The notes under the pieces were generated by a model. The model had not been told where the DNA came from. It saw only the letters and a list, made by a program, of their open reading frames with translations, and did not search any database. A program made the position numbers and the translations under genes. A DNA stretch of 64,000 nucleotides, taken from Dendrobates tinctorius (taxonomy: Eukaryota). Shown piece by piece: positions 13,443 through 59,900 of the stretch (the first letter of the stretch is position 1; every line of letters begins with the position of its first letter). The stretch covers positions 8,060,001 through 8,124,000 of the forward strand of contig NW_027361869.1 in assembly GCF_039654945.1 (NCBI RefSeq), read 5' to 3'.

Positions 13443-16400
13443 CCCTGCCCGGAATAAAAGCCCTTTACCGGCTGACACCGGACAGCAGAGCGCGCTTCCT
13501 CCGCCGCTTCTTCTTCGCCATCTTCTCCACCGACCGTCTGTAGCTGTCACTAGCAGAGACGCCGGGGAAGAGCGGAGAGGAGGTCCCGGGATCATCGCCG
13601 TCGTCCTCCAGATCTGCACATCGCTGTGTATCCGGGAAGATACATCTGCTGGGGGAACTCGTTCCTCCTGTTCCCGGCTCCTGTCACCATCACAGGGATC
13701 TTTACTACAATGTCTATCGTACAGGACGCTGATTGTACGATGTGGGGACGACCTGGAGCTGCTGAGAGCCCAGAAGGGTAACACAGGCGATGGCTCCGCT
13801 GACTGCCGCCTCCCTGACCTGTGACCTCCCTGTACCCCGTATGTGCGGAGTATTGGGGGTGACAGATGCTCCACATCAGGAGATGATCCACATCGGCGGC
13901 TGATTGCAATGACCTGCTAAAATCTGGTCTCACCCATTGTGGAGCTGTGACCGCTGAGGCCTGTAATGGTGGAAGAGAACTGATAAGGGGCAGCTTCATA
14001 ATGCGACTCACTCCCCAACCAGACGCATCTCCGGGGAGAAAACTGTGAGATATTCCTGGATTTATGTGACCCAACTATTGTGCAAAAGGGGAATATTGGG
14101 AGAAAAGAGGAGACACAAAATGCAATTTCTACACACAGAGCACAGCTGTATAGGGATGAGGTGGTGGCACTGATCATAAAGCTCTGCAGGGATGATGTGG
14201 TGGCACTGATGATACAGGTGTGCAGGGACGAGGTGGTGGCACTGATCATACAGCTCTGCAGGGATGAGGTTGTGGCACTGATCATACAGCTCTGCAGGGA
14301 TGAGGTTGTGGCACTGATCATACAGCTCTGCGGCGACAAGGTGGTGGTACTGATCATACAGCTCTGCAGGGAATGTGTGGTGGCACTGATCATAAAGTTC
14401 TGCAGTGACGAGTTGGTAGCACTAATCATACTGCTTTTCAGGGAGGAGGTGGTGGCACTGATCATACAGCTCTGAAGGGAATGTGTGGTGGCACTGATCA
14501 TAAAGTTCTGCAGTGACGAGTTGGTAGCACTAATCATACTGCTTTTCAGGGAGGAGGTGGTGGCACTGATCATACAGCTCTGCAGGAATGAGGAGGTGGC
14601 ACTGATCATACAGCTCTGCGGGGACAAGGTGGTGACACTGATAATACACCTCTGCGGCGACAAGGTGGTGGCACTGATCATACAGCTCTGCGGGGACAAG
14701 GTGTTGGTACTGATCATACAGCTCTGCAAGGACCAGGTGGTGGCACTTATCATACAGCTCTGCAGAGAGGAGGTGGTGGCACTGATCATACACCTCTGCG
14801 GCGACAAGGTGTTGGTACTGATCATACAGCTCTGCAAGGACCAGGTGGTGGCACTTATCATACAGCTCTGCAGAGAGGAGGTGGTGGCACTGATCATGCA
14901 GCTCTGCTCGGACAATGTGGTGGCACTTATGTTACAGCTTTGCGGGGACAAGGTGGTGGCAGTGATAATACAGCTCTACAAGGATGAGGTGGTGGTACTA
15001 ATCATACAGCTCTGCAGGGAGGAGGTGGTGGCACTGATCATACAGCTCTACGGGGACAAGATGGTGGCACTGATCATAAAGCTCTGAGGGGATGACGTGG
15101 TGGCACTGATCAAATAGCTCTGCAGGGATTCGGTGGTGGCACTGATCGTACAGCTCTGCAAGGAGTTGGCGGTGGCACTGATCATACAACTTTGCGGCGA
15201 CAAGGTGGTGGCACTGATCATACAGGTCTGCAGGTAAAAGGTGGTGGCACTGAACATACAGCTCAGCGCGGACAAGATGGTAGCACTGATCAGACAGCTC
15301 TACATGGAGGAGGTTGTGGCACTGAACATACTGGTTTGCAGGGATGAGGTAGTGGCACTGATCATACAGCTGTGCCTGGATGAGGTGGTTGCACTGATCA
15401 TACAGCTCTGCAGGGAAAAGTTGGTGACACTGATCATACACCTCTGCAGCAACAAGGTGGTGGTACTGATCATACAGCTCTGCGGGGACAAGATGGTGGC
15501 ACTGATCATAAAGCTCTGCAGGGATGATGTGGTGGCACTGATCATACAGGTCTGCAGGGATGAGGTGGTAGCACTCATCATACATCTCTGCAGGGACGAG
15601 GTGGTGGCACTGGTCAAATAGCTCTGCAGGGATTAGGTGGTGGCACTGATCTTACAGCTCTGCAAGGAGTAGGCAGTGGCACTGATCATACAGCTCTGCG
15701 GGGACTAGGTGGTGGTACTGATCATACAGCTCTGTGCTGACCAACTGATGGCACTGATCATACAGCTTTGCGGTGACAATGTGGTGGCACTGATTATACA
15801 GTTCTGCGGCGACAACGTGGTAGTACTGATCATACAGCTCTGCATGGAAAGGTGGTGGCACTGCACAAGCAGCTCTGCAGGGAAACGGTGGTGGCACTGA
15901 ACATACAGCTCAGCGCGGACAAGGTGGTGGCACTGATCAGACAGCTCTACAGGGAGGAGGTGTTGGCACTGTACATACTTGCTTGCAGGGATGAGGTAGT
16001 GGCACTGATCATACACCTCTGCAGGGATGAGGTGATGGCACTGAAGATACAGCTCTGCAGGGATGAGGTGGTTGCACTGATCATAAGGCTCTGCAGGTAC
16101 AAGGTTGTGTCACTGATCTTAAAGCTCTGCAGGGATGAGGTGGTGGCACTGATCATACAGTTCTGCGGGGATCAGGTGGTGGCACTGATCATACAGCTCT
16201 GTGTGGATAAGATGGTGGCAATGATAATACAGCTCTGCAGGGAGGAGTTGGTGGCACTGATCATACAGCTCTGCAAGGATGAGGTGTTGGAACTGATCAT
16301 ACAGCTTTGCGGGGACAATGTGGTTGCACTGATTATAAATCTCTTTAGGGATAAGTTGGAGGCACTGATCATGCGGTTCTGCAAGGATGAGGTTGTGGCA

Positions 16401-17170: not shown

Positions 17171-17422
17171 TGATGATATTGGAGACTGCGGACAGACAGT
17201 CACTGGCGTTCTGTATTACAGAGGGGTAAGGTCAGGGGAAGACGTATACAGTTGTGTGTCATCAGCATAAAGATGGTACCGAAAGCCAAATTTGCTGATG
17301 GTCTGTCCAATTGGGGCTGTATAGAGAGAGAAGAGATGGGGGCCAAGGACTGAGCCCTGAGGTACCCAGACAGCAAGAGGAAGAGGAAATGAAGTGGAGC
17401 CAGAGAACAAAACACTGAAGAA
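17171..17422 (-). mobile_element. L2 RT core fragment, copy 1
   Basis: [16 protein letters not shown]...[11 protein letters not shown]. Confidence 0.85.
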
Positions 17423-17621
17423 CTCTGCAGGGACGAGGTGGTGGCACCGATCATACAGGTCAGCAGGGACGAGGTGGTGGCACTCATTATAGAACTCTGC
17501 AGGGATGAAGTGGTGGCACTGATCATACAGCTCTGCGGGGGAGGAGGAGGTGGCACTGATCATACAGGCCAAAAATGGGGGACGGGGTATAGCATGCAGA
17601 TGGAGAGCACATTGATGCTGG

Positions 17622-17764
17622 AAAGAGCCTTTGTGTTGCAGTCAGGTGAGCAGGACAGATCTAAGCTCTCTCCCCACGGATCCAGCGGGCTAGCTGGATA
17701 TCTTTGGGCATGATGGTGACCCTCTTAGCGTGGATCGCGCACAGATTTGTGTCCTCAAACAGCC
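17622..17764 (-). pseudogene. H3: H3 3' fragment, copy 1 (33 codons, 3'UTR, half stem-loop)
   Basis: Matches 11186-11328; [33 protein letters not shown]. Confidence 0.93.
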
Positions 17765-20700
17765 AAGATGGTGGACTGATCATACAGCTCTGTAGTGACG
17801 AGGTGGTGGCACTGATCATGCAGTTCTGCAGGGATGAGGTTGTGGCACTGATCATACAGCTCGGCAGGGATGAGGTAGTGGCACAGATCATACAGCTCTG
17901 CAGGGAGGAGAGGAGGTAGTGGCACAGATCATACAGCCCTGCAGGGATGAGGTGGTGGCACTGATCATACACCTCTGCGGCGACAAGGTGGTGGCACGGA
18001 TCCTACAGCTCTGCGAGGACCAGGTGGTGGCACTGATCGTAAAGCTCTGCAGAGGTGGTGGTGGCACTGATTAGACAGCTTTGCAGGGAGTAGGTGGTGG
18101 CACTGATCATACAGCTCTGCGGGGACAAAGTGGTGGCACTTATGTTACAGCTTTGCGGGGAAAAGGTTGTGGCACTGATCATACAGCTCTGCAGGGAGGA
18201 GTTGGTGGCACTGATCATACAGCTCTGTGCTGACCAACTGGTGGCACTGATCATGCAACTTTGCGGTGACAAGGTGATGGCACTGATTATACAGTTCTGC
18301 GGTGACAAGGTGCTGGCACTGTTCATACAGGTCTGAAGGGAAAAGGAGGTGACACTGAACATACAGCTCAGCGCGGACAAGGTGGTGGCACTGATCAGAC
18401 AGCTCTACAGGGAGGAGGTGGTGGCACTGATCATACAGCTCTGTGCTGACCAACTGGTGGCACTGATCATGCAACTTTGCGGTGACAAGGTGATGGCACT
18501 GATTATACAGTTCTGCGGTGACAAGGTGGTGGCACTGATCAAACAGCTCTGCAGGGATTAGGTGGTGGCACTGATCATACAGCTCTGTGCTGACCAACTG
18601 GTGGCACTGATCATGCAACTTTGCGGTGACAAGGTGATGGCACTGATTATACAGTTCTGCGGTGACAAGGTGGTGGCACTGATCATACAGGTCTGCAGGG
18701 AAAAGGTGGTGGCACTGAACATACAGCTCAGCACGGACAAGGTGGTGGCACTGATCAGACAGCTCTACAGGGAGGAGGTTTTGGCACTGAACATCCTGGT
18801 TTGCAGGGATAAGGTAGTGGCTCTGATCATACAGCTCTGCAGGTATGAGGTGGTGGCACTGAAGATTCAGCTCTGCAGGGATGAGGTGGTTGCAATGATC
18901 ATACAGCTCTGTGGGGACAAGGTTGTGTCACTGATCTTACAGATCGGCAGGGAGTATGTGGTGGCATTGATCATTCAGCTCTGTGTGGATAAGATGGTGG
19001 CACTGATAATGCAGCTCTGCAGGGAAGAGGTGGTGACACTGATCATACAGCTCTGCAAGGACGAGGTGTTGGCACTGATCATACAGCTTTGCGGGGACAA
19101 TGTGGTTGCACTGATTATACATCTCTTTAGGGATAAGTTGGAGGCACTGATCATGCAGTTATGCAGGGATGAGGTTGTGGCACTGATCATACAGCTCTGA
19201 AGGGATGAGGTAGTGGCACAGATCACACAGCTCTGCAGGGATGAGGATGTGGCACTGATCATACAGCTCTGCGGGGACAAGGTGGTGACACTGATAATAT
19301 ACCTCTGCGGCGACAAGGTGGTGGTACTGATCATACAGCTCTGCAGAGAGGAGGTGGTGGCACTGATCATACAGCTCTGAAGGGAATAGGTGGTGGCACT
19401 GATCATAAAGTTCTGCAGTGACGAGTTGGTGGCACTAATCATACTGCTTTGCAGGGAGGAGGTGGTGGCACTGATCATACAGCTTTGCGTGGACAAGGTG
19501 GTGGCACTGATCATATAGCTCTGAGGGGATGACGTGGTGGACTGATCAAATAGCTCTGCAGGGATTAGGTGGTGGCAATGATCATACAGCTCTGCAAGGA
19601 GTAGGCGGTGGCACTGATCTTACAGCTCTGTGCTGACCAACTGGTGGCACTGATCATACAACTTTGTGGTGACAAGGTGGTGGCACTGATTATACAGTTC
19701 TGCGGCTACAAGGTGGTGGCACTGATCATACAGCTCTGCAGTGACGAGGTTGTGGCAATGATCATGCAGTTCTGCAGGGATGATTCAGTAGCACAGATCA
19801 TACAGCCCTGCAGGGATGAAAGGGTGGCACTGATCATAGAGCTCTGCAGGGAAAAGTTGGTGACACTGATCATACACCTTTGTGGCGACAAGGTGATGGT
19901 ACTGATCATACAGCTCTGCAAGGACCAGGTGGTGGCACTGATCATAAAGCTCTGCAGGGATGAGGTGGTGGCACTGATCATACAGCTCTGCAGAGAGGAG
20001 GTGGCGGCACTGATCATACACCTCTGCAGCAACAAGGTGGTGGTACTGATCATACAGCTCTGCGGGGACAAGATGGTGGCACTGATCATAAAGCTCTGCA
20101 GGGATGATGTGGTGGCACTGATCATACAGGTCTGCAGGGATGAGATAGTGGCTCAGATCATACAGCTCTACAGGGACGAGGAGGTGGCACTGATCATACA
20201 CCTCTGCGGGGACAAGGTGGTGACACTGATTATACACGTCTGTGGCGACAAGGTGCTGGTACTGATCATACAGCTCTGCAGGGAGGAGGTGGTGGCACTG
20301 ATCATACAGCTCTGAAGGGAATAGGTGGTGGCACTGATCATAAAGTTCTGCAGTGACGAGGTGGTGGCACTAATCATACTGCTTTGCAGGGAGGAGGTGG
20401 TGGCACAGATCATACAGCTCTGCAGAGAGGAGGTGGTGGCACTGATTATACAGCTTTGCAGGGAGGAGATGGTGGCACTGATCATACAGCTCTGCAGGGA
20501 GTAGGTGGTGGCACTGATCATACAGCTCTCCCGGGACAATTTGATGGCACTGATCATACAGCTCTGCTCGGACAAAGTGTTGGCACTTATGATACAGCTT
20601 TGTGGGGACAAGGTGGTGGCACTGATCATACAGCTCTGCAGTGACGAGGTCGTGGCACTGATCATGCAGTTCTGCAGGGATGATTCAGTAGCACAGATCA

Positions 20701-21328: not shown

Positions 21329-21499
21329 AAAAATAACTCAAAGATGGATGGGAATGAGAAATCCCACAGGATAAAAAAGATGCTACATGAATGATAAAAA
21401 TAATAACAATGATAATAATAAATGGCACAATTTTTATTTTTTTAAATAAAGATGCCTTTATTAAAATATTGACACAACAATTAAGTGCATTAAAAAAAA

Positions 21500-21543
<44 letters not shown>

Positions 21544-21850
21544 GTATACAATCACATTAGCCAAAACCAATCCATATCAAAAAGGCTTAATTAATGAACC
21601 AGGTACAAAAATGCATATATATAGTGACACAAGGATAATTACATAAAAAGAAAATAAATTTATGTATAATGAATGTGCCCAAAGTGCAGAGGTGCAGCTG
21701 TGCAAAAAATTCAAATCGCACTAAGGCGTGTGCAACAAAACACAAAGTGTAAAATACCTGTAAGCCGATTGACTCTATGTGAGTTGTATAAGAACATGCC
21801 CCGACGGGCGTTTCGGAAATAAATCTCCTTCGTCAGGTGGATAGATACGC
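21329..21850 (-). mobile_element. AT-rich insertion with (TA)n and hammerhead-like core, Penelope-like/retrozyme relic, copy 1
   Basis: Flanked by the direct repeat CTGCAAGGA; minus strand has CTGACGA-stem-GAAAC..GTC. Confidence 0.6.
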
Positions 21851-27800: not shown

Positions 27801-28048
27801 GTGGTGGCTCTGATCTTAAAGCTCTATAAGGATTAGGTGGAGGTACTAATCATACAGCTCTGCAGGGAGGAGGTGGTGGCCCTGATCATACAGCTCTGCG
27901 GGGACAAGATGGTGGCACTAATCATAAAGCTCTGCAGGGATGAGGTGGTGGCACTGATCATACAGCTTTGTGTGGACAAGGTGGTGGCACTGATCATGTA
28001 GCCCTGAGCGGAGGACGTGGTGGCACTGATCATACAGCTCTGCAAGGA

Positions 28049-28215: not shown

Positions 28216-28262
<47 letters not shown>

Positions 28263-29974: not shown

Positions 29975-30133
<159 letters not shown>

Positions 30134-34201: not shown

Positions 34202-34985
34202 TGTTGTGAGTTCATTTTCCCCTTCACTACTGAGGCCCAATGAACTCCCTCTTCTGGTAAAGAAAGGTAGTGAGCCTGATTATCAAACACCTGAGCCTAA
34301 TGATGATGACTGGCTGGTGGAGTTACTGACTGGATATAAGGCCGCCGACGCCCTTCTGCCCTGCGGGTGATTTCTCTGTGGGATCCTTGGAAACCAGTCT
34401 GAATTCCTGGTCTTCTAAAGCTAAGTTTTTTGCATTTGTGCTTTGACTTTGTTTTGCTTTGTTTTTCTGGATTTCTGCCATTCCCTGCTGGGGTGAGCTG
34501 AATTCCTTTAGCTCTGTCTTCTGAAAATACCTGAGTGCTGATTTAGTTTTTGAAGCCTAGCTGCTTCAGGGTCTTTTTCCATATAAGCTTGTTGGCTTAT
34601 GTCTTTGATATGGTTTTGGCAGATTGCAGACAGCAACCTTCCTTTCCTGTTCTGTTTAGTTAGCTTGGGCCCCATCGTTTGCTCAGCCTATCTTTCTATC
34701 TGTGTGAGTGTTTTTTCATCTTGCTTCACCGTCATTATATGTTGGGGGCTGCCTTTTACTTTGGGGTCTGCTCTGGGGCAGTTTAGATTTCCTTTTCTGT
34801 CTTTAGGCTATTTAGCTCTCCGGCTGTGATCGAGGGGTCTAGGGCACCGTAGGAACCCCCCACGGCTGCTGCTAGTTTTGTTGATAGGTTCATGGGTCTG
34901 CAATCTGATAGTTGCCAACTTCTCTGGTTTTCTGGACGTAGCTTCTATTTTTGTGTCTGCCTCCTACGCTGACTCAATCATAACA
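34202..34985 (+). mobile_element. Solo LTR of the Gypsy element
   Basis: TGTTGTGA...TCATAACA, flanked by GTTGGC on both sides; homologous to 40217-41013. Confidence 0.93.
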
Positions 34986-37564: not shown

Positions 37565-37615
<51 letters not shown>

Positions 37616-39733: not shown

Positions 39734-39892
<159 letters not shown>

Positions 39893-40216: not shown

Positions 40217-43200
40217 TGTTGTGAGTTCATTTTCCCCTTCACTACTGAGGCCCGATGAACTCCCTCTTCTGGTAAAGAAAGGTAGTGAGCCTGATTATCA
40301 AACACCTGAGCCTAATGATGATGACTGGCTGAGTGGAGTTACTGACTGGATATAAGGCCGCCGACGCCCTTCTGCCCTGCGGGTGATTTCTCTGTGGGAT
40401 CCTTGGAGACCAGTCTGAATTCCTGCTCTTCTAAAGCTAAGTTTTCTGCTCGGCTTTTTGCATTTGTGCTTTGACTTTGTTTTGCTTTGTTTTTCCGGAT
40501 TTCTGCCATTCCCTGCTGGGGTGAGCTGAATTCCTTTAGCTCTGTCCTCTGAAAATACCTTAGTGCTGATTTAGTTTTTGAAGCCTAGCTGCTTCAGGGT
40601 CTTTTTCCATATCAGCTTGTTGGCTTATGTCTTTGATATGGTTTTGGCAGATTGCAGACAGCAACCTTTCTTTCCTGTTCTGTTTAGTTAGCTTGAGCCC
40701 CATTGTTTGCTCAGCCTATCTTTCTATCTGTGTGAGTGTTTTTTCATCTTGCGTCACCGTCATTATATGTTGGGGGCTGCCTTTTACTTTGGGGTCTGCT
40801 CTGGGGCAGTTTAGATTTCCTTTTCTGTCTTTAGGCTATTTAGCTCTCCGGCTGTGATTGAGGGGTCTAGGGCACCGTAGGAACCCCCCACGGCTACTGC
40901 TAGTTGTGTTGATAGGTTCAGGGGTCTGCAGTCTGATAGTTGCCAACTTCTCTGGTTTTCTGGACGTAGCTTCTATTTTTGTGTCTGCCTCCTACGGTGA
41001 CTCAATCATAACAGAATCACCCGCCATACCGCAGATCCTAGGGTACTCAATAGCAGGAAAGAATTGTAAAAAAAAAAAAAAAAAGTGTGTATATTTTTTC
41101 CTCTATATCTCTGAGGCCGTAGGGGGATTTTTTTTTTTTCTCTCAATGGAGATAAAGCAATTGTCTGATCGTGTGGAGCAGCTCGCTGCGGAAGTGCGTG
41201 GAATTTCCGCCTACCTTGCTCATTCACATGCTGCTGAACCAAAGATTCCTACACCTGATGTATTTTTTGGGGATCGGTCTAAATTTTTGAATTTCAAAAA
41301 TAATTGTAAATTATTTTTTGCCTTGAAGCCTAACTCGTCAGGGAGCTCCGCGCAGCAGGTTAAAATTGTCATCTCTTTGCTGCGTGGCGATCCCCAGGAT
41401 TGGGCGTTTTCTTTGAAACCAGATGATCCTTTTCTGACTAATGTGAACGCATTTTTTCAAGCCTTGGGGTTGTTGTATGACAAACCTAATGCCATTGATC
41501 AGGCTGAAAAGACCCTGCTGGCATTGAACCAGGATCGAGATTCTGCAGAATTGTACTGTCAAAAATTCCGAAAATGGGCAGTACTTACTACCTGGAATGA
41601 TAATGTCTTGGCTGCTCTCTTTCGGAAGGGGTTGTCAGAAGCCGTAAAAGATACTATGGTGGGATTTCCTGTTCCCTCTGGTCTTGACGATTCTATGTCA
41701 TTAGCTATTCAGGTTGATCGGCGTTTGCGCGAACGCAAAACTGCACGAGAGGTGTTGCCACCTGTTGAACAAATGTCTGAACCTATGCAATGTGATAGAG
41801 TTTTGTCCAGAGAGCAGCGTCAGGAGTTCAGAAGGCGTAATAAGTTGTGTTTTTTTTCTGTGGAGATGCCTCGCATGTTATTTCTGTCTGCCCTAAACGA
41901 GAGAAACGCTTTGCACACACGTTTTCTGTTGGTAGTGTTCAACCTAAGTTTCTTCTGGCTATTACTCTGATCTGCTCCCTGTCCACATTTTCCGCCAAGG
42001 CTTTTGTGGATTCGGGAGCAGCCCTAAACCTAATGGACTTGGATTTTGCTAAACGTTGTGGATTTCCGATGACACCTCTGCAGACGCCTATCCCTTTGAG
42101 GGGGATTGATGCTACTCCTTTGGCTAAAAATAAACCTCAGTTTTGGACCCAGGTGGTAATGCGGGTCGCCCCAGACCATCAAGAAAATTGCAGATTTTTG
42201 GTGTTGCATAATCTGCATGATACTATTGTTCTGGGGTTTCCCTGGTTACAAATTCATAATCCAGTTTTGGATTGGAAATCTGTGTCTATGGTGAGTTGGG
42301 GTTGTCGGTGTGCCTTTAGTGAGGCTCCGGTGTTTTCCACCTCTCCTCAGTCGCATGATGTTCCTGATTATTTGGCGGACTTTTATGATGTATTTAGTGA
42401 GAATGAGTCTGCGTCTCTGCCTCCTCATAGGAGTTATGACTGTGCAATTGAACTGAGCCCGGGGTGTAAATTTCCCAAGGGTCGGCTCTTCAATTTATCT
42501 GTACCCGAGCATGAGGCTATGCGATCCTATATTAAGGAGGCGTTGGAGAAGGGTCATATTAGACCATCCTCGTCACCCTTAGGTGCCGGTTTTTTTTTGT
42601 AGCCAAAAAGGATGGATCATTAAGACCTTGTATTGATTATCGTGCCCTCAACAAAATTACTGTTAAATATCAGTATCCGTTACCCCTGATTTCTGATCTA
42701 TTCTCCAGAGTTAAAGGTGCTTGCTGGTTTACCAAGCTTGACCTCAGGGGGGCGTATAATCTTATTCGCATTAAGCATGGGGATGAATGGAAGACGGCGT
42801 TTAATACTCCGGAGGGACATTTTGAGTACCTGGTGATGCCTTTTGGGCTCACTAATGCCCCTTCTGTCTTCCAGTGCTTCATGAACGATATTTTCCGAGA
42901 TTTTGTCGATAAATTTTTGATTATCTATCTGGATGATATTTTGATCTTCTCCAAGGACTGGGATTCTCATGTGGAACATATTCGGACTGTGTTCCGGATC
43001 TTGAGGGAGAATTCCCTGTATGTCAAAGGATCTAAATGCCTTTTTGGAGTACAGAGGATTTCTTTTTTGGGATTTATTTTGTCCCCGTCAACTATTGAAA
43101 TGGACCCGGCCAAGGTACAGGCCATTTACGATTGGGTTCAGCCCACTTCATTGAAGGCCCTCCAGAAGTTTTTGGGTTTTGCTAATTTTTATCGGAAATT

Positions 43201-45998
43201 TATAGCAAAATTTTCTAGTATTGCCAAGCCATTGACTGATTTGACTAAGAAGGGTGCTGATGTGTTAAATTGGTCTCCGGAGGCTGTTTCTTCCTTTCAG
43301 GAGCTGAAGCGAAGATTCACCTCCGCCCCGGTTTTGCGGCAACCTGATGTCTCACTTCCGTTCCAGGTAGAGGTGGATGCTTCTGAGATTGGTGCAGGAG
43401 CTGTTTTGTCCCAAAAGGATCCTGTAACATCTAAAATTAATCCCTGTGCTTTCTTTTCCCGAAAGTTCTCTCCATCTGAACGTAACTATGATGTGGGGAA
43501 TCGGGAACTGTTGGCCATGAAAGGGGCATTTGAGGAGTGGAGACATTGGTTGGAGGGAGCTAAGCATCAAGTCGTGGTCCTCACTGACCACAAGAATTTG
43601 ATTTACCTAGAGTCGGCTAAGCGCTTGAGCCCTAGACAGGCTAGGTGGGCTTTGTTTTTTTACACGTTTTGATTTTGTGGTTTCTTTTCTTCCTGGAACT
43701 AAGAATGTCAAGGCAGACGCCCTCTCTAGGAGCTTCTTTGCTGATTCTCCTGTGGTGACCAAGCCTGCTACCATCTTAGGCGAAGGGGTAGTTCTTTCTG
43801 CCATCTTGCCCGATTTGAGACGTGCTCTGGAAGAGTTCCAGGAGGACAAACCTGAGCGTTGTCCCAGTGGAAAGTTGTATGTTCCTGACCAGTGGAAGAA
43901 GAGAGTGATGTCTGAAGTTCATTGCTCTGCTTTGGCTGGTCATCCAGGTATTTTTTTTACTAGACATCTGGTGAGTCGATCTTTTTGGTGGCCCTCCTTG
44001 TCTCGTGATGTCAGGAATTTTGTGCAGTCCTGTGGGACGTGCTCCCGGTCTAAATCGTGTTCTCGCTCTAGTGGGTTGTTGATGCCTTTGCCTGTCCCCA
44101 AGAGGCCATGGACCCATATTTCAATGGATTTCATCTCTGATATGCCTGTCTCTCAAAGGATGACTGTTATTTGGGTGATTTGTGATAGGTTCTCTAAGAT
44201 GGTTCATCTTGTACCACTCCCTAAGTTGCCGTCTTCCTCTGAGTTGGTGCCCCTGTTTTTGCAACAGGTGGTTCGCTTGCAAGGGATTCCTGAGAACATT
44301 GTATCTGACAGAGGAGTTCAGTTTGTGTCTAGATTTTGGAGAACTTTCTGTTCCAAGCTGGGAATTCAGTTGTCCTTCTCCACTGCTTTTCACCATCAGA
44401 CCAATGGGCAGACAGAGAGAACAAACCAGACCTTTGAGTCATATTTGAGATGTTTTATTTCTGCTGATCAGGATGATTGGGTTTCATTTTTGCCCTTGGC
44501 CAAATTTGCTTTAAATAATGGAGCTAGTTCTGCCACTTTGATGTCACCTTTTTTTGTAACTTTGGGTTTCATCCTCGATTTTCTTCAGGGCAGGTGGAGC
44601 CCTCTGCCTGCCCAGGTGTTGACACTGTGGTGGAGAGAATGCACCAGATCTGGGACCAAGTGGTGGATAAGTTATCTCTCTCCCAGGAAAAGGCCCAGCG
44701 GTTTTCCAACCGACATAGGACCATTGGTCCCCAGTTTAAGGTTGGTGATATGGTGTGGTTATCATCAAAAAATATTGCTATGAAGGTGGCTCCTCCTAAG
44801 TTTAAGCCTAGATTTATTGGACCTTACAAGATTTTGGAGATTATTAATCCGTTCTCTTTTCGTTTGGCTCTTCCTGTCACATTTAAAATCCATAATGTGT
44901 TCCATAAATCTTTGTTGAAGAGGTTTGTTGAACCTGTTGTTCCGGGGGTGGCACCTCCAGACCCTGTATTGGTTGAAGGTAACATGGAATATGAGGTAGA
45001 GAAAGTACTGGATTCCCGTCTGGCTAGACGGAGACTCCAGTATTTGGTTAAGTGGAAGGGTTATGGTCAGGAGGATAATTCCTGGGTCTCTGCCTCTGAT
45101 ATTCATGCCAAAAGATTGGTGCGTGCCTTTCATCGGTCTCACCCGGATCGCCCTGGTGGCATGGATGAGGGTTCGGTGACCCCTCCTCAAGGGGGAGGTA
45201 CTGTTGTGAGTTCATTTTCCCCTTCACTACTGAGGCCCGATGAACTCCCTCTTCTGGTAAAGAAAGGTAGTGAGCCTGATTATCAAGCACCTGAGCCTAA
45301 TGATGATGACTGGCTGAGTGGAGTTACTGACTGGATATAAGGCCGCCGACGCCCTTCTGCCCTGCGGGTGAATTCTCTGTGGGATCCTTGGAGACCAGTC
45401 TGAATTCCTGCTCTTCTAAAGCTAAGTTTTCTGCTCGGCTTTTTGCATTTGTGCTTTGACTTTGTTTTGCTTTGTTTTTCTGGATTTCTGCCATTCCCTG
45501 CTGGGGTGAGCTGAATTCCTTTAGCTCTGTCTTCTGAAAATAACTGAGTGCTGATTTAGTTTTTGAAGCCTAGCTGCTTCAGGGTCTTTTTCCATATCAG
45601 CTTGTTGGCTTATGTCTTTGATAGGGTTTTGGCAGATTGCAGACAGCAACCTTTCTTTCCTGTTCTGTTTAGTTAGCTTGGGCCCCATCGTTTGCTCAGC
45701 CTATATTTCTATCTGTGTGAGTGTTTTTTCATCTTGCTTCAGCGTCATTATATGTTGGGGGCTGCCTTTTACTTTGGGGTCTGCTCTGGGGCAGTTTAGA
45801 TTTCCTTTTCTGTCTTTAGCCTAATTAGCTCTCCGGCTGTGATCGAGGGGTCTAGGGCACCGTAGGAATCCCCCACGGCTACTGCTAGTTGTGTTGATAG
45901 GTTCAGGGGTATTCAATCTGAGAGTTGCCAACTTCTCTTTTTTTCTGGACGTAGCTTCTATTTTTGTGTCTGCCTCCTACGGTGACTCAATCATACCA
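40217..45998 (+). mobile_element. Full-length Ty3/Gypsy chromovirus (Tf1/sushi-like) LTR retrotransposon
   Basis: 797-bp LTRs at 40217-41013 and 45202-45998, flanking GTTGGC repeat, PPT AAGGGGGAGGTAC, domain order gag-PR-RT-RH-IN-chromo. Confidence 0.96.
41146..45200 (+). pseudogene. Frameshifted gag-pol
   Basis: CCHC knuckle CFFCGDASHVISVC, protease VDSGA, RT YLDD, RNase H DAS, integrase GHPG/SDRG/TER, chromodomain YEVEKVLDSR..YLVKWKGY. Confidence 0.93.
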
Positions 45999-47257
45999 GT
46001 TGGCACTGATCATACAGCTCTGCAGGGAGTAGGTGGTGGCACTGATCATACAGCTCTGCGGGGACAAAGTGGTGGCACTTATGTTACAGCTTTGCGGGGA
46101 CAAGGTGGTGGCACTGATCATACAGCTCTGCAGGGAGGAGTTGGTGGCACTGAACATACAGCTCAGCGTGGACAAAGTGGTGGCACTGATCTTAAAGCTC
46201 TACAAGGATGAGGTGGTGGTACTAATCATACAGCTCTGCAGGGAGGAGGTGGTGGCACTGATCATACAGCTCTGCGGGGACAAGATGGAGGCACTGATGA
46301 TAAGGCTCTGCAGGGATGATGTGGTGGCACTGATCGTACAGGTCTGCAGGGATGAGGTGGTAGCACTCATCATACAGCTTTGCGTGGACAAGGTGGTGGC
46401 ACTGATCATATAGCTCTGAGGGGATGACGTGGTGGCACTGATCAAATAGCTCTGCAGGGATTAGGTGGTGGCACTGATCATACAGCTCTGCAAGGAGTAG
46501 GCGGTGGCACTGATTCAACAGCTGTGCGAGGAGTAGGCAGTGGTACTGATCATACAGCTCTGTGCTGACCAACTGGTGGCACTGTTCATGCGGTGACAAG
46601 GTGGTAGCACTGATTATACAGTTCTGCGGCGACAAGGTGGGGGCACTGATCATACATGTCTGCAGGGAAAAGGTGGTGGCACTGAACATACAGATCAGCG
46701 CGGACAAGGTGGTGGCACTGATCAGACAGCTCTACAGGGAGGAGGTTGTGGCACTAAACTGGTTTGCAGGGATGAGGTAGTGGCACTGATTATACAGCTC
46801 TGCAGTGAGAGGTGGTGGCACTGAAGATACAGCTGTGCAGGGATGAGGTGGTTGCACTGATCATACAGCTCTGCAGGGAGTAGGCGGTGGCACTGATCAT
46901 ACAGCTCTGCGGGGACTTGGTGGTGGTACTGATCATACAGCTCTGTGCTGACCAACTGGTGGCACTGATCATACAACTTTGTGGTGACAAGGTGGTGGCA
47001 CTGATTATACAGTTCTGCGGCTACAAGGTGGTGGCACTGATCATACAGGTCTGCAGGGATGAGTTGGTGGCACTGATCATGTAGCCCTGAGGGGATGACG
47101 TGGTGGCACTGATCAAATAGCTCTGCAGGGATTAGGTGGTGGCACTGATCTTACAGCTTTGCGGGGACAATGTGATGGCACTGATTATATATCTCTTTAG
47201 GGATAAGTTGGAGGCACTGATCATGCGGTTCTGCAGGGATGAGGTTGTGGCACTGAT

Positions 47258-50200
47258 AATGATAATAATAATAATAATACAAAATTTTATTTTTATAGCG
47301 CCGACATATTCCGCAGCACTTTACATTTCAAAGGGGATTTGTACAGACAATAGACATTACAGCATAACAGTAATCACATACAGTAGATTATAACAAATAC
47401 CAAGAGGAAAGAGGGCCCTGCTCGCAAGTTTACAGTCTATGAGGAAAGAGGTAGACACGAAAGGTGGGTGGTAACAGTTGCCCTGATTGTAGGAACCAGC
47501 CATACTGTTAGGTATGTGACAGTACGGACACAGAGGGCTAATGGATGCATAAAACATGTGAGAACATGATGCGGGAAAACTGCTTATGGTAAAACTTTTG
47601 GCTGTGCCACACGGGGATAGATTAGGTTAATGTGTTGAGGCGATAGACCAGTCTGAATAAATGCGTTTTCAGGGCACGCTTAAAATTGTGGGGATTGGGG
47701 ACTAATCGTATTGACCTGGGAAGTGCATTCCAAAGAATTGGCGCTGCACGTGTAAAGTCATGGAGACGGGAGTGGGAGGTTCTGACTATTGAGGATGCTA
47801 ACCTCAGGTCATCAGCAGAACGGAGGGCGCGGGTAGGGTGGTATACTGAAACAAGGGAGGAGATGTAGGGTGGTGCTGAGCCATGGAAGGCTTTGTGGGT
47901 GAGGGTAAAAGGTTTATACTGAATTCTGGAGTGGATGGGTAGCCAGTGTAATGACTGGCACAAGGTAGAGGCATCGGTGTAACGATTGGTGAGGAATATA
48001 ATCCTGGCTGCAGCATTCAAGACAGATTGGAGGGGGGAGAGTTTGGTAAGAGGGAGACTGATTAGAAGAGAGTTACAATAGTCGAGAGGAGAATGAATAA
48101 GGGAAACAGTAAGAGCTTTTGCAGAGTCAAAAGTAAGAAAAGGTCGAATTCTAGAAATGTTTTTGAGGTGCAGATGACAAGAGCGAGCCAGTGATCGAAT
48201 GTAGGGGGCAAAGGAAAGCTCGGAATCAAGTATGACCCCAAGACAGCGGGCCTTTTACTGGGGAGTAATAGTGGAACCACACACAGAAATAGCAATGTTG
48301 GGTATAGGTACATTAGTAGAGGGAGGAAACATCAGGAGTTCAGTCTTTGACAGGTTCAGTTTCAGATATAGTGAGGACATGATATTAGACACAGTGTTTA
48401 GACAATCGCCGGTGTTTTCTAGAAAGGCTGGCGTGATGTCAGGAGAAGAAGCGTATAATTGGGTGTCATCAGCATAGAGATGGTACTGGAAACCAAATCT
48501 ACTGATTGTTTGACCAATAGGGGCAGTGTACAAGGAGAAGAGGAGAGGGCCTAGAACCGATCCTTGGGGGACCCCAACAGTAAGGGGAAGGTGAGAGGAG
48601 GAGGAACCGGCAAAAGATACAGTAAAGGAGCAGTCAGAGAGATAGGAGGAGAACCAGGAGAGAACGGTGTCCTTGAGGCCAATGGAACGGAGCATAGTGA
48701 GGAGGAGCTGATGATCCACAGTGTCGAATGCTGCAGAGAGATCCAAGAGAATTAGCATGGAGTAATGACCATTTGATTTAGCTGTTAGCAGATCATTATA
48801 GACTTTAGTGAGGGCAGTTTCAGTGGAGTGTACAGAACGGAAATCGGATTGGAGAGGGTCGAGAACAGAGTTTTCTGAGAGATAGCGGATAAGACGGGAG
48901 TGGATCAGGCGTTCCAGGAGTTTAGAGATGAAGGGAAGATTAGAGACAGGTCTATAGTTAGCGGCACAGTTTTGGTCGAGGGATGGTGTTTTAAGTAGTG
49001 GATGTTTGATGGCAAACTTAAATGTGGAGGGAAAAATACCTGAAGAGAGAGAGGTTAAATAGTTTAGTTAGGTGAGGGGTGACAGCAGGGGAAAGGGACT
49101 GGAGGAGATGTGACGGAAATGGGTCACTGGTGCAAGTAGTTGGGCGAGAAGATGCAAGGAGCCTGCTTACTTCTTCTTCTGTGACTGGTTCAAAATCAGA
49201 GAGTGAGCTAGATGCAGTGGGGGAGGGAGGACAGTGCATGGTATGAGGTGATTGGGAGATAATTTCCTGTCGGATCTGGTCAATTTTTTCTTTGAAGTAA
49301 TTGGCCAGATCGTCAGCTCGGAGCTCCGAGGTTGGGGCCTGTACTCTTGGGTTGAGAAGAGAATGAAAAGTGTCAAAGAGACGTTTCGAGTTATTGGACA
49401 GTGAGGTGATGAGGGTGTTGAAATAGGTTTGTTTGGAGAGGTGAAGGGCAGTGTTGTATGTTCAAAGCATAAACTTATAATGGATGAAATCTTCGTGTAG
49501 ATTGGATTTTCTCCACAGACGTTCGGCGCACCTGGAGCACCGCTGCAGGAAACGTGTTTGGGAAACGTGTTTGCACCGTGTGCCAGGGTTGTCGCCGTCT
49601 GTGTTGTGGTGTTCTAGTTATAAGGGGTGCAAATTCATCCAGGGCACTTTGAAGTGTTTCATTGTAATGCTTCAATGCAGAATCAGGGCATGAGAGGGAG
49701 GAGATAGGGGCCAATGAAGACTGCAAGTTCTTCGTAAGTTTCTGGGTGTTAATGGCCTGTATGTTTCTATAAGTCTGGACAGTGGGGGTGACCTGAGCAG
49801 CCTGGCAGTTCTTGATAGAGAATGAAAGAAGATTGTGGTCAGAGAGCGGGAGAGGGGAGTTTGCAAAATCATCCACTGCACAAAGCCGAGAGAAGACCAA
49901 GTCGAGGGAGTTTCCGACTTCATGCGTTGGAGAATTAGTAAGCTGCGAAAGGCCAAATGAGGAGGTTAGAGATAAAAGGTGAGCAGCAGATGGTGAGAGG
50001 GGAAGAGCAATGGGAATGTTGAAATCTCCCATGATGAGGGTAGGGATGTCACAGGAGAGAAAATGTGGAAGCCAAGTGGCAAAATGATCCAGGAACTGAT
50101 GGGAGGGGCCGGGAGGACGATACACCACCGCCACTCGCATGGAGAAGGGGGTGTAGGGTCTGACGGCATGGACCTCAAAAGAAGGGAAGACAAGTGAGGG

Positions 50201-50959
50201 TACTTGAGGGATAACCTGAAAGGTACATTTTGGTGATAGGAGCAGACCAACGCCTCCACCTGCTCTACTGTCTGATCTTGGGGTATGAGAGAAGTGTAGC
50301 CCCCCGTATGAAAGAGCAGCAGCAGCGGTAGTGTCTGACTGCTGGATCCAGGTTTCAGTAAGAGCCAGAAGGTTAAGAGAATTAGAAAGGAAGAAGTCAT
50401 GGATGAAGGAGAGTTTGTTACAAACTAAGCGAGAATTCCAAAGTGCACAATTAAGAGAGACAGATGGCATGCAGGGAATATTAATAAGATTAGAGGGGTT
50501 TCTAAGTGTAGCAGTTGGGGGGTTTGACTTTCTATAACATGGGGGACCAAGGTTGGGAGCAATGTCTCCTGCGACTAGGAGAAGGAGGATAGAAAGAGTG
50601 AGCAGATTGTTAAGTGATTTGTGAGAGCGTCTCTGATGTTGAATGGTGGGACTGACTGGATCTGTGCAATTTAACAATGTGAAAAGAGCGTGAGTGCTAT
50701 ACATAGGAGAGGAAAGGAGCGAGGGGCCGATATGGATGGAGTGTAGAGAGTTAATGCAAGGGCGGTGGATGTGTGTGAATGCAGCGGCCAGGATATAAAT
50801 TATACAAATGCTTATGGTATATATTTGATGTGCTCCAAATGTACAGGGAGTAGATGTATATAAATGTCTTACCTGTCTCCTGCCCTGTCTAACTGCCATG
50901 CTATAACTGACAGTAGTACTTTGATTCATGTACTTCGATTACATGTGCATAAATGCCAC
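47258..50959 (-). mobile_element. L2-clade LINE (ORF2 endonuclease and RT, disrupted) with (TTA)n tail
   Basis: CALWN..LTETW..GGGVG..YRPP..GDFN..SDHN; [26 protein letters not shown]; tail at about 47258-47279; probable TSD CACTGAT (47251, 50960). Confidence 0.9.
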
Positions 50960-56900: not shown

Positions 56901-59900
56901 AGGGACGAGGAGGTGGCACTGATCATACAGCTCTGTGGAGACAAGGTGGTGGCACTGATAATACACCTCTGCGGCGACAACGTGGTGGTACTGATCATAC
57001 AGCTCTGCAGAGAGGAGGTGGTGACACTGATCATACAGCTCTGAAGGGAATAGGTGGTGGCACTGATGATACAGCTCTGTAGGGATGAGGTGGTTGCACT
57101 GATCATACAGCTCTATGGGGAGGAGGCGGTGGCACTGATCATAAGGCTCTGTAGGGACAAGGTTGTGTCACTGATCTTACAGCTCTGCAGGGAGTAGGTG
57201 GTGGCATTGATCATTCAGCTCTGTAGGGAAGAGGTGGTGACACTGATCATAAAGCTCTGCAGGGATGAGGTAGTGGCACAGATCACACAGTGCTGCAAGG
57301 ACCAGGTGGTGGCACTGATCATACAGCTCTGCAGGGACGAGGAGGTGGCACTGATCATACAGCTCTGCAGGGACAAGGTGGTGGTACTGATCATACAGCT
57401 CTGCAGAGAGGAGGTGGTGGCACTGATCATACAGCTCTGAAGGGAATATGTGGTGGCACTGATCATAAAGTTCTGCAGTGACGAGGTGGTGGCACTAATC
57501 ATACTGCTTTGCAGGGAGGAGGTGGTGGCACTGATCATACAGCTCAGCAGGGAGGACGTGGTGGCACTGATTATACAGCTCAGCAGGGACAAGGTGGTGG
57601 CACTGATCATACAGCTTTGCGGGGATAATGTGGTTGCACTGATTATACATCTCTTTAGGGATAAGTTGGAGGCACTGATCATGCAGTTCTGCAGGGATGA
57701 GATAGTGGCTCAGATCATACAGCTCTGCAGGGACGAGGAGGTGGCACTGATCATACACCTCTGCGGCCACAAGGTGGTGGTACTAATCATACAGCTCTGC
57801 AGTGACGAGGTCGTGGCACTGATTATGCAGTTCTGCAGGGATGATGTAGTGGCACCGATCATACAGCTCTGCAGGGATGATTCAGTAGAACAGATCATAC
57901 AGCCCTGTAGGGATGAGGTGATGGCACTGATCATACAGCTCTGCAGGGAAAAGTTGGTGACACTGATCATACAGCTCTGCTCGCACAAAGTGGTGGCACT
58001 TATGATACAGCTTTGTGGGGACAAGGTGGTGGCACTGATCATGCAGTTCTGCAGGGATGAGGTAGTGACACCGATCATACAGCTCTGCAGGTATGATTCA
58101 GTAGCACAGATCATACAGCCTGCAGGGATGAGGTGGTGGCACTGATCATACACCTCTGCGGCGACAAGGTGGTGTTACTGATCATACAGCTCTGCAAGGA
58201 CCAGGTGGTGGCACTAATCATACAGCTCTGCAGAGACAAGGTGGTGGCACTGATTATACAGCTCTGCAGGGAGGAGGTTGTCGCACTGAACATACTGGTT
58301 TGCAGGGATGTGGTGGTGGCACAGATCATACAGCTCTGCAGAGAGGAGGTGGTGGCACTGATTATACAGATTTGCAGGGAGGAGATGGTGGCACTGATCA
58401 TACAGCTCTGCAGGGAGTAGGTGGTGGCACTGATAATAGAGCTCTCCCGGGATAATTTGATGGCACTGATCATACAGCTCTGCTCGGACAAAGTGGTGGC
58501 ACTTATGATACAGCTTTGTGGGGACAAGATGTTGGCACTGATCATACAGCTCTGCAGTGATGAGGTTGTGGCACTGATCATGCAGTTCTGCAGGGATGAG
58601 GTAGTGGCACCGATCATACAGCTCTGCAGGGATGTTTCAGTAGCACAGATCATACAGCCCTGCAGGGATGAGGTGGTGGCACTGATCATACAGCTCTTCA
58701 GGGAAAAGTTGGTGACGCTGATCATACACCTCTGCGGCGACAAGGTGGTGGCACTGATTATACAGTTCTGCGGCGACAAGGTGGTGGCACTGATCACACA
58801 GGTCTGCAGGGAAAAGGTGGTGTTATTGAACATACAGCTCAGCGCGGACAAGGTGGTGGCACTGATCAGACAGCTCTACAGGGAGGAGGTTGTGGCACTA
58901 AACATACTGGTTTGCAGGGATGAGGTTGTGGCACTGATCATACAGCTCTGCAGGGAGGAGGTGGTGGCACTGATCATACAGCTCTGCAGGGAATAGGTGG
59001 TGGCACTGATCGTACAGCTCTGCTGGGACAAGATGGTGGTACTGATCATAAAGCTCTGCAGGGATGATGTAGTGGCACTGATCATACAGGTCTGCAGAGA
59101 CGAGGTGGTGGCACTGATCATACAACTTTTCGTGGACAAGGTGGTGGCACTGATCAGACAGCTTTGCGTGTACAAGGTGGTGGCACTAATCAGGTAGCCC
59201 TGAGGGGATGACGTGGTGGCACTGATCAAAAAGCTCTGCAGGGATTAGGTGGTGGCACTGATCATACAGCTCTGCAAGGAGTAGGTGGTGGCACTGATCA
59301 TACAGCTTGCGTTGACAATGTGGTGGCACTGATTATACAGTTCTGCGGCGAAAAGGTGGTGGCACTGATCATACAGCTCTGCATGTAAAGGTGGTGGCAC
59401 TGAACATACAGCTCTGCAGGGAAAAGGTGGTGGCACTGAACATACAGGTCAGCAGGGACGAGGTGGTGGCACTCATTATAGAACTCTGCAGGGGTGAAGT
59501 GGTGGCACTGATCATACAGGCCAAAAATGGGGGACGGGGTATGGAGTATGGCATGCGGATGGAGAGCACATTGATGCTGGAACCAGCGCGTCGCCTATCG
59601 CGCTCCCCCATCAGTACATAGGTTTTCATCTGTGCTTTTTTTTTTTTTAGTAATTACAGAAAAGCAGGAGGATTTGTGGTTTATTGGCTTAATTAATTTT
59701 CTTCTGTTACATAATATTTGTTCAGTGAACCTGCGGATAATTACACTACACTAATGTGGGGTTAACCCTCTGTGTAGCTCTAGGACTTTTCACCAATGAT
59801 GGCAATTAGCTCGATCTGCACGTGCCGCAATCTCCTCAGTCACTTACAGTATTATCGGGACTCCCAGCTGTTTCTGCACTGATTACAGGGGGCTATAAGC

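What the first reader, a model, noticed from the sequence alone, without database searches (positions are those of the whole stretch)
14141..59519. Hundreds of tandem HDE-like U7 sites between histone units: candidate U7 sponge, fail-safe terminator or histone-locus-body scaffold
Seen: about 32 kb of the same monomer, all in one orientation. The HDE-sense strand is the minus strand, which is the strand of H2A (pointing into the array from about 1.1 kb away), H3 and H1. Monomers keep the ACCAC-spacer-CAGAGCTG geometry but lack a complete stem-loop, so they offer no SLBP site. Known: in newts, histone clusters are separated by satellite tracts that are transcribed by read-through on lampbrush loops, and U7-rich bodies attach at histone loci. 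Inference: read-through RNA here would be a multivalent U7 snRNP ligand that could nucleate the locus body, titrate U7, or trigger SLBP-independent cleavage and termination. + strand RNA would be antisense to histone HDEs. Function is hypothetical.
Basis: partly seen in the sequence, partly recalled or inferred. Interest (0 to 1): 0.88.

Follow-up and report, generated by a model that had tools for sequence, protein, structure and literature searches.

The report
Satellite made of histone U7 sites
The 45-kb spacer between two histone gene clusters is a 36-bp satellite copied from the histone H1 mRNA 3'-end signal, so it holds hundreds of potential U7 snRNA binding sites, but these sites decay like the rest of the repeat, which points to a neutral satellite rather than a selected U7-binding device.

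Summary
Between 14142 and 59519 lie 31.9 kb of one 36-bp monomer (872 complete copies, all in one orientation). It is interrupted by 13.5 kb of transposons and fossil histone fragments.

The monomer is the 3' half of the histone stem, ACCACC, a spacer and the HDE CAGAGCTGTA. A 13-copy array starts in phase at the real H1 stem-loop, so the first monomer is H1's own processing signal. No monomer in the array has a complete stem-loop.

With mouse U7 as proxy, the consensus pairs as well as the H1 HDE (9 bp, -14 kcal/mol). 56% of monomers reach -10 kcal/mol, about the level of the weakest genuine HDEs here (H4 -9.9, H3 -10.6).

The functional reading is not supported by sequence:
- The HDE core is no better conserved than the rest (0.891 vs 0.896).
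- Pair-breaking transitions outnumber wobble-preserving ones.
- CpGs have decayed.
- Monomers are only about 79% alike, while the gene units are 99.5% alike.

Public read data are contigs without strand and could not show transcription.

Best reading: a neutrally evolving satellite born from the H1 3' signal, with U7 affinity as a by-product. A collective U7 or locus-body role is not excluded. The scan's unchecked notes report the same satellite at other histone loci of this genome.

The parts
14142..59519 (-). Main 36-bp satellite array, HDE-sense on the minus strand. The satellite blocks are 14142-17172, 17423-17567, 17766-21328, 21845-28048, 28583-29526, 29777-29920, 30119-33712, 33963-34201, 34988-37387, 37947-39285, 39536-39679, 39878-40216, 46001-47260 and 50960-59519. 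They hold 31.9 kb and 872 complete monomers.
12108..12583 (-). Mini-array of 13 monomers directly behind H1. The first monomer (12583-12548) is the 3' half of the H1 stem-loop, ACCACC and the genuine H1 HDE. All 13 keep AGAGCTGTATGA.
   Evidence: Rfam Histone3 hit 12550-12596
2133..3656 (-). H2A-proximal end of the preceding array (42 monomers). It is 94.4% identical, together with the spacer, to 57997-59519.
12619..13236 (-). Histone H1 gene. Its 3' signal is the source of the monomer.
60619..61023 (-). Histone H2A gene of the next unit. It is transcribed towards the array, which begins 1,100 bp downstream. The copy in the first unit is at 4753-5157.
11225..11635 (-). Histone H3 gene (stem-loop 11178-11193), downstream of the mini-array.
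40217..46000 (+). Ty3/gypsy-type LTR retrotransposon inserted in the array. It encodes protease, RT, RNase H and integrase. Its LTRs are 798 bp and 97.1% identical.
34202..34987 (+). Solo LTR of the same element (95-96% identical to the LTRs).
47261..50959 (-). LINE fragment (endonuclease and reverse transcriptase) inserted in the array.
17568..17765 (-). Fossil of a collapsed histone unit. It consists of 147 bp of the H3 3' end (96.6% to 11182-11328), broken inside the stem-loop, then about 50 bp of junction sequence that is also found at 3657-3720. Further copies lie at 29921-30118 and 39680-39877.
17173..17422 (-). 250-bp LINE reverse-transcriptase fragment. Further copies lie at 29527-29776, 33713-33962 and 39286-39535 (97-99% identical).
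21329..21844 (.). AT-rich insertion with a (TA)n run. Further copies lie at 28049-28582 and 37388-37946 (92-95% identical).

Best explanation
This is a satellite DNA that arose by tandem duplication of a 36-bp piece of the histone H1 3'-processing signal. That piece runs from the 3' arm of the stem-loop through the ACCACC cleavage region and a pyrimidine spacer to the U7-binding HDE CAGAGCTGTA.

The satellite grew by unequal exchange into the roughly 45-kb spacer of a 55.9-kb histone repeat unit. It has since evolved without detectable selection on its U7-complementary core. It accumulated methyl-CpG decay, transposon insertions, multi-kb internal duplications and collapsed histone units.

Shown: the origin, anatomy, orientation and decay pattern. 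Inferred: any minus-strand read-through RNA from H2A, or from H1 through its mini-array, would carry many 9-bp U7-complementary sites with no SLBP site. These would bind U7 snRNP weakly, and that affinity is a by-product of ancestry rather than a maintained function.
For: Origin:
- The H1 stem-loop GGCTCTTTTCAGAGCC is followed in phase by 13 monomers, and the first HDE is H1's own.
- The main-array consensus matches the H1 cassette at 32 of 36 positions.
- The H2B and H1 HDEs share CAGAGCTGT at 15-16 nt from the stem.

No constraint on the HDE:
- Conservation of the core AGAGCTGT is 0.891, against 0.896 for the other non-CpG positions. Compared base by base there is no excess either.
- The best-kept block is TGATCAGTG, not the HDE.
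- Pair-breaking transitions sum to 0.388, against 0.081 for G.U-preserving ones. G>A and T>C are at least as frequent inside the core as outside.
- Neither identity nor U7 pairing energy changes with distance from the genes.

Neutral-DNA signatures:
- CG is kept in only 7% of monomers at positions 16-17 and 20% at positions 22-23; TG or CA replaces it.
- Monomers are about 79% identical pairwise with no short higher-order repeat. The gene part of the unit is 99.5% identical and the array edge 94% identical between neighbouring units.
- An LTR element, a solo LTR, a LINE and fossil H3 ends are tolerated inside the array.

Weak biochemical expectation: reducing the U7 duplex to 9 bp gives under 5% cleavage even with a stem-loop and none without it in mouse extract (PMC7026596).

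Transcripts: RNA runs of the same species hold 0.00-0.01 of the satellite words.
Against: - With hundreds of redundant sites, selection on each single site would be too weak to see. Lack of per-site constraint therefore does not exclude a collective function.
- 38% of monomers still pair with the U7 proxy as well as the H1 HDE (-14 kcal/mol), and 56% reach -10 kcal/mol, about the level of the H3 and H4 HDEs.
- All 13 monomers behind H1 keep positions 25-36 intact while 8 other positions vary. The nominal p is 0.02-0.15, depending on how the block and the events are counted.
- The minus-strand RNA is not more folded than shuffles, so the sites would be accessible.
- By unchecked notes, the satellite stays with histone loci across the genome. 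A related species holds the same junctions.
- In runs guessed to be RNA from that relative, the spacer downstream of the mini-array has 4-5 times the depth of the H1-upstream spacer. This fits read-through but is not proof of it.
Confidence: 0.7

Rival explanations
1. Multivalent U7 snRNP ligand. Read-through RNA from H2A, as on oocyte lampbrush loops, carries hundreds of HDEs per unit. It would concentrate U7 snRNP at the locus and so seed or anchor the histone locus body ('sphere'), or it would buffer free U7.
For: - About 490 of 872 monomers reach -10 kcal/mol or better with the U7 proxy, against 9% of shuffles.
- All sites are in the sense of H2A, H3 and H1.
- The RNA is not strongly self-folded.
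- Amphibian spheres contain U7 snRNP and sit at histone loci, and newt intercluster satellite is transcribed by read-through.
- Notes say the satellite follows histone loci genome-wide.
Against: - The U7-complementary core is not preferentially conserved, and pair-breaking changes dominate.
- CpG decay suggests methylated, mostly silent DNA.
- Same-species RNA runs hold almost none of the satellite.
- A 9-bp duplex without SLBP is weak.
- One AATAAA lies between H2A and the array.
Confidence: 0.15
2. Back-up processing and termination device. If cleavage at the genuine site fails, U7 snRNP bound at later monomers cuts at the retained ACCA-to-HDE spacing. This gives entry to a 5'-3' exonuclease that stops Pol II. 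The extended H1 mRNA is then trimmed back to the SLBP-protected stem-loop. This reading applies chiefly to the 13-copy array behind H1.
For: - The mini-array starts at the H1 signal, and all 13 copies keep the HDE and the 36-nt spacing.
- 95% of all monomers have no indel, so the cleavage-to-HDE spacing is kept.
- Strong HDE-U7 duplexes can be cleaved without SLBP.
- An H1 contig of the related species runs about 32 nt past the stem-loop into satellite.
Against: - The duplex is only 9 bp, a strength that gave under 5% cleavage with a stem-loop and none without it.
- Notes give a copy number behind H1 of 13 to about 100 between loci, which suggests drift.
- The homogeneity of the mini-array can be explained by youth.
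- The first monomers met after H2A are degenerate (-6 kcal/mol).
Confidence: 0.1
3. A DNA-level role unrelated to U7. The array would act as spacer chromatin or as a protein-binding repeat, since the best-conserved block is TGATCAGTG with the palindrome TGATCA. It could insulate histone units or set replication or recombination behaviour.
For: Positions 1, 4, 5, 15 and 18 are 97-99% conserved, higher than any HDE position. The 36-nt length is kept in 95% of monomers.
Against: The best-kept positions are mostly T, with one G, and T is the base that mutates least here (transition frequency 0.008). The pattern can therefore be mutational. No factor is known, and nothing was tested.
Confidence: 0.04
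4. A repeat-protein gene. Because 36 is a multiple of 3, the array contains long open frames ([12 protein letters not shown]..., [12 protein letters not shown]...).
For: ORFs of up to 407 aa occur on both strands.
Against: Three of the six frames are open simply because the monomer lacks stops in them. The frames break every 90-400 aa, and there is no gene structure.
Confidence: 0.01

Closest known systems
Newt (Notophthalmus viridescens) satellite 1 between histone gene clusters (Stephenson, Diaz, Gall and co-workers 1981; cited in PMC5615363 and PMC12046345)
   Same: Histone quintets of about 10 kb are separated by tens of kb of one satellite. The genes point into the satellite. In the newt, the satellite is transcribed by read-through on lampbrush loops, and U7-containing spheres sit at the histone loci.
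   Different: From my own knowledge, the newt unit is about 222 bp and has not been described as derived from the histone 3' signal. Here the unit is 36 bp and demonstrably is the H1 cleavage-site plus HDE cassette. Transcription here is not shown. Sequence relatedness could not be tested.
Canonical replication-dependent histone 3'-processing signal (stem-loop with SLBP, plus HDE with U7 snRNP)
   Same: The same HDE core as H1 and H2B of this window, the same ACCACC and the same spacing. The predicted duplex with U7 (9 bp, -14 kcal/mol) equals that of H1.
   Different: The monomers have no 5' arm of the stem, so there is no SLBP site. They are repeated about 900 times per unit. The core is not under detectable constraint.
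Satellites born from gene fragments (for example the 5S-rDNA-derived PcP190 satellite of frogs; from my own knowledge)
   Same: A short functional gene segment was amplified into a long tandem array that then evolves as satellite DNA.
   Different: The source here is an RNA-processing signal, so the by-product is an array of snRNA-complementary sites rather than of promoter or RNA-gene pieces.
Architectural or sponge RNAs from repeats (satellite III in stress bodies, NEAT1; histone pre-mRNA as a seed of locus bodies)
   Same: The hypothetical RNA would be multivalent for one RNP.
   Different: No expression, binding or site constraint has been shown here.

Membership tests
Histone downstream element (functional U7 snRNP site) | Core complementary to the 5' end of U7 snRNA | tested here: met
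   The consensus AGAGCUGUA forms 9 Watson-Crick pairs and -14.0 kcal/mol with mouse U7 (sequence from PMC7026596, used as a proxy), equal to the H1 HDE. 38% of monomers reach -14 or better and 56% reach -10 or better, against 9% of shuffles.
Histone downstream element (functional U7 snRNP site) | Fixed distance downstream of an ACCCA/ACCAC cleavage site | tested here: met
   The spacing is the same as in H1 (the core starts 17 nt after the stem position). 95% of monomers have no indel.
Histone downstream element (functional U7 snRNP site) | SLBP-binding stem-loop immediately upstream | tested here: not met
   No stem-loop pattern with up to 1 mismatch occurs in 14141-59519, and no Rfam Histone3 hit falls there. 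Only the first monomer behind H1 has one.
Histone downstream element (functional U7 snRNP site) | Binds U7 snRNP and directs cleavage | not testable with these tools
   This needs CLIP, pull-down or in vitro processing. Literature on 9-bp duplexes predicts weak activity.
Satellite DNA | Long head-to-tail arrays of one monomer in one orientation | tested here: met
   872 complete monomers, 31.9 kb, with strand counts of 373 vs 0.
Satellite DNA | Present at many loci or in many copies in the genome | tested here: inconclusive
   Three arrays lie in this window. Unchecked scan notes place the satellite at other histone loci. No genome-wide search was possible.
Newt-type intercluster histone satellite | Separates tandem histone quintets by tens of kb | tested here: met
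   The unit period is 55,866 bp, made of roughly 10.5 kb of genes plus 45.4 kb of array.
Newt-type intercluster histone satellite | Transcribed by read-through from histone genes | tested here: inconclusive
   Only unstranded contigs were available. Runs of a relative guessed to be RNA hold the satellite and the spacers, but DNA carry-over is not excluded. Same-species RNA runs hold about 0.
Newt-type intercluster histone satellite | Sequence homology to newt satellite 1 | not testable with these tools
   No newt satellite sequence was available. A full-text search for the monomer found no paper on it; the only hit was a 15-mer in an unrelated abalone paper.
Sponge or architectural RNA | Binding sites kept by selection | tested here: not met
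   Core conservation is 0.891 against 0.896 for the rest, and pair-breaking transitions exceed pair-preserving ones.

The most novel reading that the evidence does not exclude
In oocytes and early embryos, H2A and H1 read-through transcribes the arrays. The resulting RNA carries hundreds of U7-complementary sites per unit, over many units. It acts collectively as the tether that concentrates U7 snRNP at the histone locus. This would give a sequence-level explanation for why amphibian 'spheres' (histone locus bodies) attach to histone loci, and a natural case of a satellite RNA serving as an snRNP scaffold or buffer.
Probability: 0.15. Interest if true: 0.85.

Novelty: new variant of a known kind. 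Interest (0 to 1): 0.55.

Why it matters
Satellites between amphibian histone clusters, and U7-rich bodies attached to those loci, have been known since the 1980s, but there has been no sequence link between the two. Here the intercluster satellite is itself made of the U7 target site of histone pre-mRNA.

This gives a clean, datable example of a satellite born from an RNA-processing signal. It also makes one idea directly testable: whether read-through satellite RNA recruits or titrates U7 snRNP. The tests are stranded oocyte RNA-seq, RNA-FISH with U7 or Lsm11, and CLIP.

The present sequence evidence argues that the sites are not individually maintained. The default expectation is therefore a neutral by-product.

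Tried and rejected
- Coding reading of the long ORFs. Rejected: 36 is a multiple of 3, so three stop-free frames stay open by construction.
- Hidden stem-loops in the array. None found. The H3 fossils break inside the loop.
- Short higher-order repeat. None found: identity by lag is flat at 0.78-0.80, with only multi-kb segmental duplications at 84-93%.
- Gradient of site quality towards the genes. None found.
- Unusual RNA self-structure of the minus-strand transcript. None found: the minimum free energy is within or above the shuffle range in 3 of the 4 places tested and about 1.7 sd below the shuffle mean in the fourth.
- A dedicated promoter for the array (the 'orphan H4 promoter' at about 4200). 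Only 31 nt at 84% and one 14-mer match the H4 promoter, which is too weak to count.
- Read evidence. Both run searches and the single read-laying run are spent. The runs are contigs without strand, and their library types are guessed or unknown. Satellite depths are sums over multi-mapping contigs and cannot be compared with single-copy depth.
- Literature. No paper in the library holds the monomer in a relevant context (the only hit was a 15-mer in an unrelated abalone paper), and none describes an HDE-derived satellite.
- Species identity. The Atlas look-up of H1 gave only 'Chordata'.
- The N runs in H2B (5561-5697, 61428-61563) were left untouched.


Full report
**What is in the window**

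The window holds one complete histone quintet and the first three genes (H2A, H2B, H4) of the next unit. The first unit has H2A (4753-5157, minus), H2B (to 5840, plus; partly N-masked and left so), H4 (7782-8093, plus), H3 (11225-11635, minus) and H1 (12619-13236, minus). H2A, H2B and H4 recur 55,866 bp further on.

Between the units, Tandem Repeats Finder reports one 36-bp repeat. I aligned the whole window to the cyclic minus-strand consensus TCAGTGCCACCACCTCGTCCCTGCAGAGCTGTATGA with a wrap-around repeated-match alignment. This gave 31,906 bp of satellite in 15 blocks inside 14142-59519. It also gave a 476-bp array at 12108-12583 and the end of the preceding array at 2133-3656.

The main array holds 902 monomers, of which 872 are complete. 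Of the complete ones, 95% are exactly 36 nt, and there are 526 distinct sequences. Orientation is uniform: diagnostic words occur 178-393 times in minus sense and never in plus sense.

**What the monomer is**

Read on the minus strand, the H1 3' end is GGCTCTTTTCAGAGCC-ACCACC-CTGTCCCCG-CAGAGCTGTATGA. It is followed without a break by TCGGTGCC-ACCACC-CTGTCCCCG-CAGAGCTGTATGA, and so on for 13 copies. Rfam places the histone stem-loop at 12550-12596.

The monomer is therefore the 3' arm of the stem, the cleavage region, the spacer and the HDE. The first monomer is the genuine H1 signal.

The real HDEs of the window are:
- CAGAGCTGT for H1 and H2B, 15-16 nt after the stem
- CAAGAGCTG for H2A
- AAGAAGAGC for H3
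- GAGAGGCT for H4

The main-array consensus differs from the H1 cassette at 4 of 36 positions. One of these is the decay of CCCCG to CCCTG. No complete stem-loop exists in the array.

**U7 pairing**

The species' own U7 is not in the window. I used the mouse U7 5' end printed in PMC7026596 as a proxy.

| Sequence | Duplex energy with U7 proxy (kcal/mol) |
|---|---|
| Consensus monomer | -14.0 (9 Watson-Crick pairs) |
| H1 HDE | -14.0 |
| H2A HDE | -15.0 |
| H2B HDE | -18.8 |
| H3 HDE | -10.6 |
| H4 HDE | -9.9 |

Of the 872 monomers, 56% reach -10 or better and 38% reach -14 or better. Of shuffles, 9% reach -10 and 2.6% reach -12. Minus-strand RNA of five consecutive monomers is not more folded than shuffles in three of the four places tested (about 1.7 sd below the shuffle mean in the fourth), so the sites would be accessible.

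Against efficient cleavage stands the same paper. A substrate reduced to 9 uninterrupted pairs is cut by less than 5% even with its stem-loop, and not at all without it. Only strong duplexes (15-16 bp) are SLBP-independent.

**Test of constraint**

- Per-position conservation is 0.891 for AGAGCTGT, against 0.896 for the other non-CpG positions.
- Base by base there is no excess in the core. G is 0.840 inside vs 0.889 outside, and T is 0.919 vs 0.921.
- The best-kept positions are T1, G4, T5, T15 and T18 (0.97-0.99). The best-kept block is TGATCAGTG.
- Within the core, transitions that would keep pairing through G.U sum to 0.081, and those that break it sum to 0.388. G>A and T>C are at least as frequent inside the core as outside.
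- CG survives in 7% of monomers at positions 16-17 and in 20% at positions 22-23.
- Identity to the consensus (0.86-0.88), core integrity and pairing energy are flat along the array. The first two monomers met after H2A are degenerate.

Only the 13-copy array behind H1 keeps all HDEs. It is young: TRF reports 93% matches between adjacent copies. The absence of variants from the HDE block is at best nominally significant.

**History**

Monomers are about 79% alike pairwise, with no short higher-order period. The gene part of neighbouring units is 99.5% identical, and the array edge plus H2A spacer is 94.4% identical. The 55.9-kb unit was therefore copied as a whole long after the monomers had diverged.

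Inside the array lie:
- a Ty3/gypsy-type LTR element with 97.1% identical LTRs
- a solo LTR
- a LINE
- a 250-bp LINE fragment in four copies
- an AT-rich insert in three copies
- three 198-bp modules made of an H3 3' end, broken inside its stem-loop, fused to the junction sequence that also borders the array on the H2A side. These are collapsed histone units.

Multi-kb internal duplications at 84-93% identity show growth by segmental exchange.

**Transcription**

Satellite words are held only by runs of the same species whose kind is unknown. RNA runs of that species hold 0.00-0.01 of them.

Laid on 11650-14600, two runs of a related species that are guessed to be RNA gave these depths:

| Region | Run X1 | Run X4 |
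|---|---|---|
| H1 | 758 | 711 |
| Spacer downstream of the mini-array | 83 | 20 |
| H1-upstream spacer | 15 | 5.5 |

Satellite contigs also appear at high summed depth. One H1 contig runs about 32 nt past the stem-loop into satellite.

These are unstranded contigs. DNA carry-over cannot be excluded, and satellite depths are sums over multi-mapping contigs. The result therefore shows that the relative shares the arrangement, but it does not show transcription.

**Context**

The literature confirms that newt satellite transcripts on lampbrush loops were ascribed to read-through. It also confirms that spheres, now called histone locus bodies, contain U7 snRNP and sit at histone loci. No paper in the library describes an HDE-derived satellite or holds the monomer in a relevant context.

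Unchecked notes of this scan report the same or a 30-bp variant of this satellite behind H1 at several other histone loci of the genome, in 13 to about 100 or more copies.

**Verdict**

The anatomy and origin are firm. The array is a satellite made of the H1 cleavage-site and HDE cassette, with several hundred still-plausible U7-complementary sites per unit on the sense strand of H2A, H3 and H1.

The functional proposals (sponge, fail-safe terminator, locus-body scaffold) remain hypotheses. The sequence gives no sign that the U7 sites are maintained, and biochemical precedent predicts weak binding without SLBP.

Because the sites are massively redundant, a collective role cannot be excluded by conservation alone. 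Stranded oocyte RNA and U7 or Lsm11 binding data would decide it.

Noticed in passing
window 5875-5888 vs 61741-61756: The H2B stem-loop of the first unit lacks 2 nt (GGCTCTTCTAAG--CC), while the second unit has the intact GGCTCTTCTAAGAGCC. The first copy may be poorly processed.
   Followed up: partly
window 17568-17765, 29921-30118, 39680-39877: Three fossil H3 3' ends (147 bp, 96% identical to 11182-11328) are broken inside the stem-loop. Each is fused to about 50 bp that also form the H2A-side junction of the array (3657-3720). These are collapsed histone units inside the satellite.
   Followed up: yes
window 5698-8131 vs 61564-64000; 2133-5560 vs 57997-61426: The gene part of neighbouring units is 99.5% identical, the array edge plus spacer 94.4%, and monomers about 79% among themselves. 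The unit was duplicated or homogenised as a whole long after the monomers diverged.
   Followed up: yes
monomer positions 34-36 and 1-6 (TGATCAGTG), throughout 14142-59519: The best-conserved block of the monomer is the junction TGATCAGTG with the palindrome TGATCA (0.91-0.99), plus T15 and T18, and not the HDE. This may be mutational (T positions mutate least) or a protein site.
   Followed up: partly
window 40217-46000, 34202-34987, 34201-36257 vs 45201-47257: A full Ty3/gypsy-type LTR element (LTRs 97.1% identical) and a solo LTR. The solo LTR and its flanking array are an 88% duplicate of the 3' LTR and its flank.
   Followed up: partly
window 21329-21844, 28049-28582, 37388-37946: An AT-rich insertion of 516-559 bp with a (TA)n run, in three copies (92-95% identical).
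   Followed up: partly
window 4198-4257 (minus sense): The 'orphan H4 promoter' pointing into the array matches the H4 promoter over only 31 nt at 84% plus one 14-mer (ACAATGAGCGGGAA). This is weak.
   Followed up: partly
window 3814-3819 (minus sense): A single AATAAA lies about 160 bp before the array, downstream of H2A. It could polyadenylate misprocessed H2A transcripts before they enter the satellite. One such hexamer in 1.1 kb is near chance expectation.
   Followed up: no
window 744-1772 (minus): An ORF with GDSL-lipase/OSK-like domains next to LINE sequence. From my own knowledge it is probably an esterase-type LINE ORF1.
   Followed up: partly
window 11650-14600, runs X1 and X4: Contigs of a related species bridge the H1-upstream/array junction and the H1 stem-loop/array junction, with 5-6% divergence in the unique spacers. 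The arrangement therefore predates the split of the two species.
   Followed up: partly
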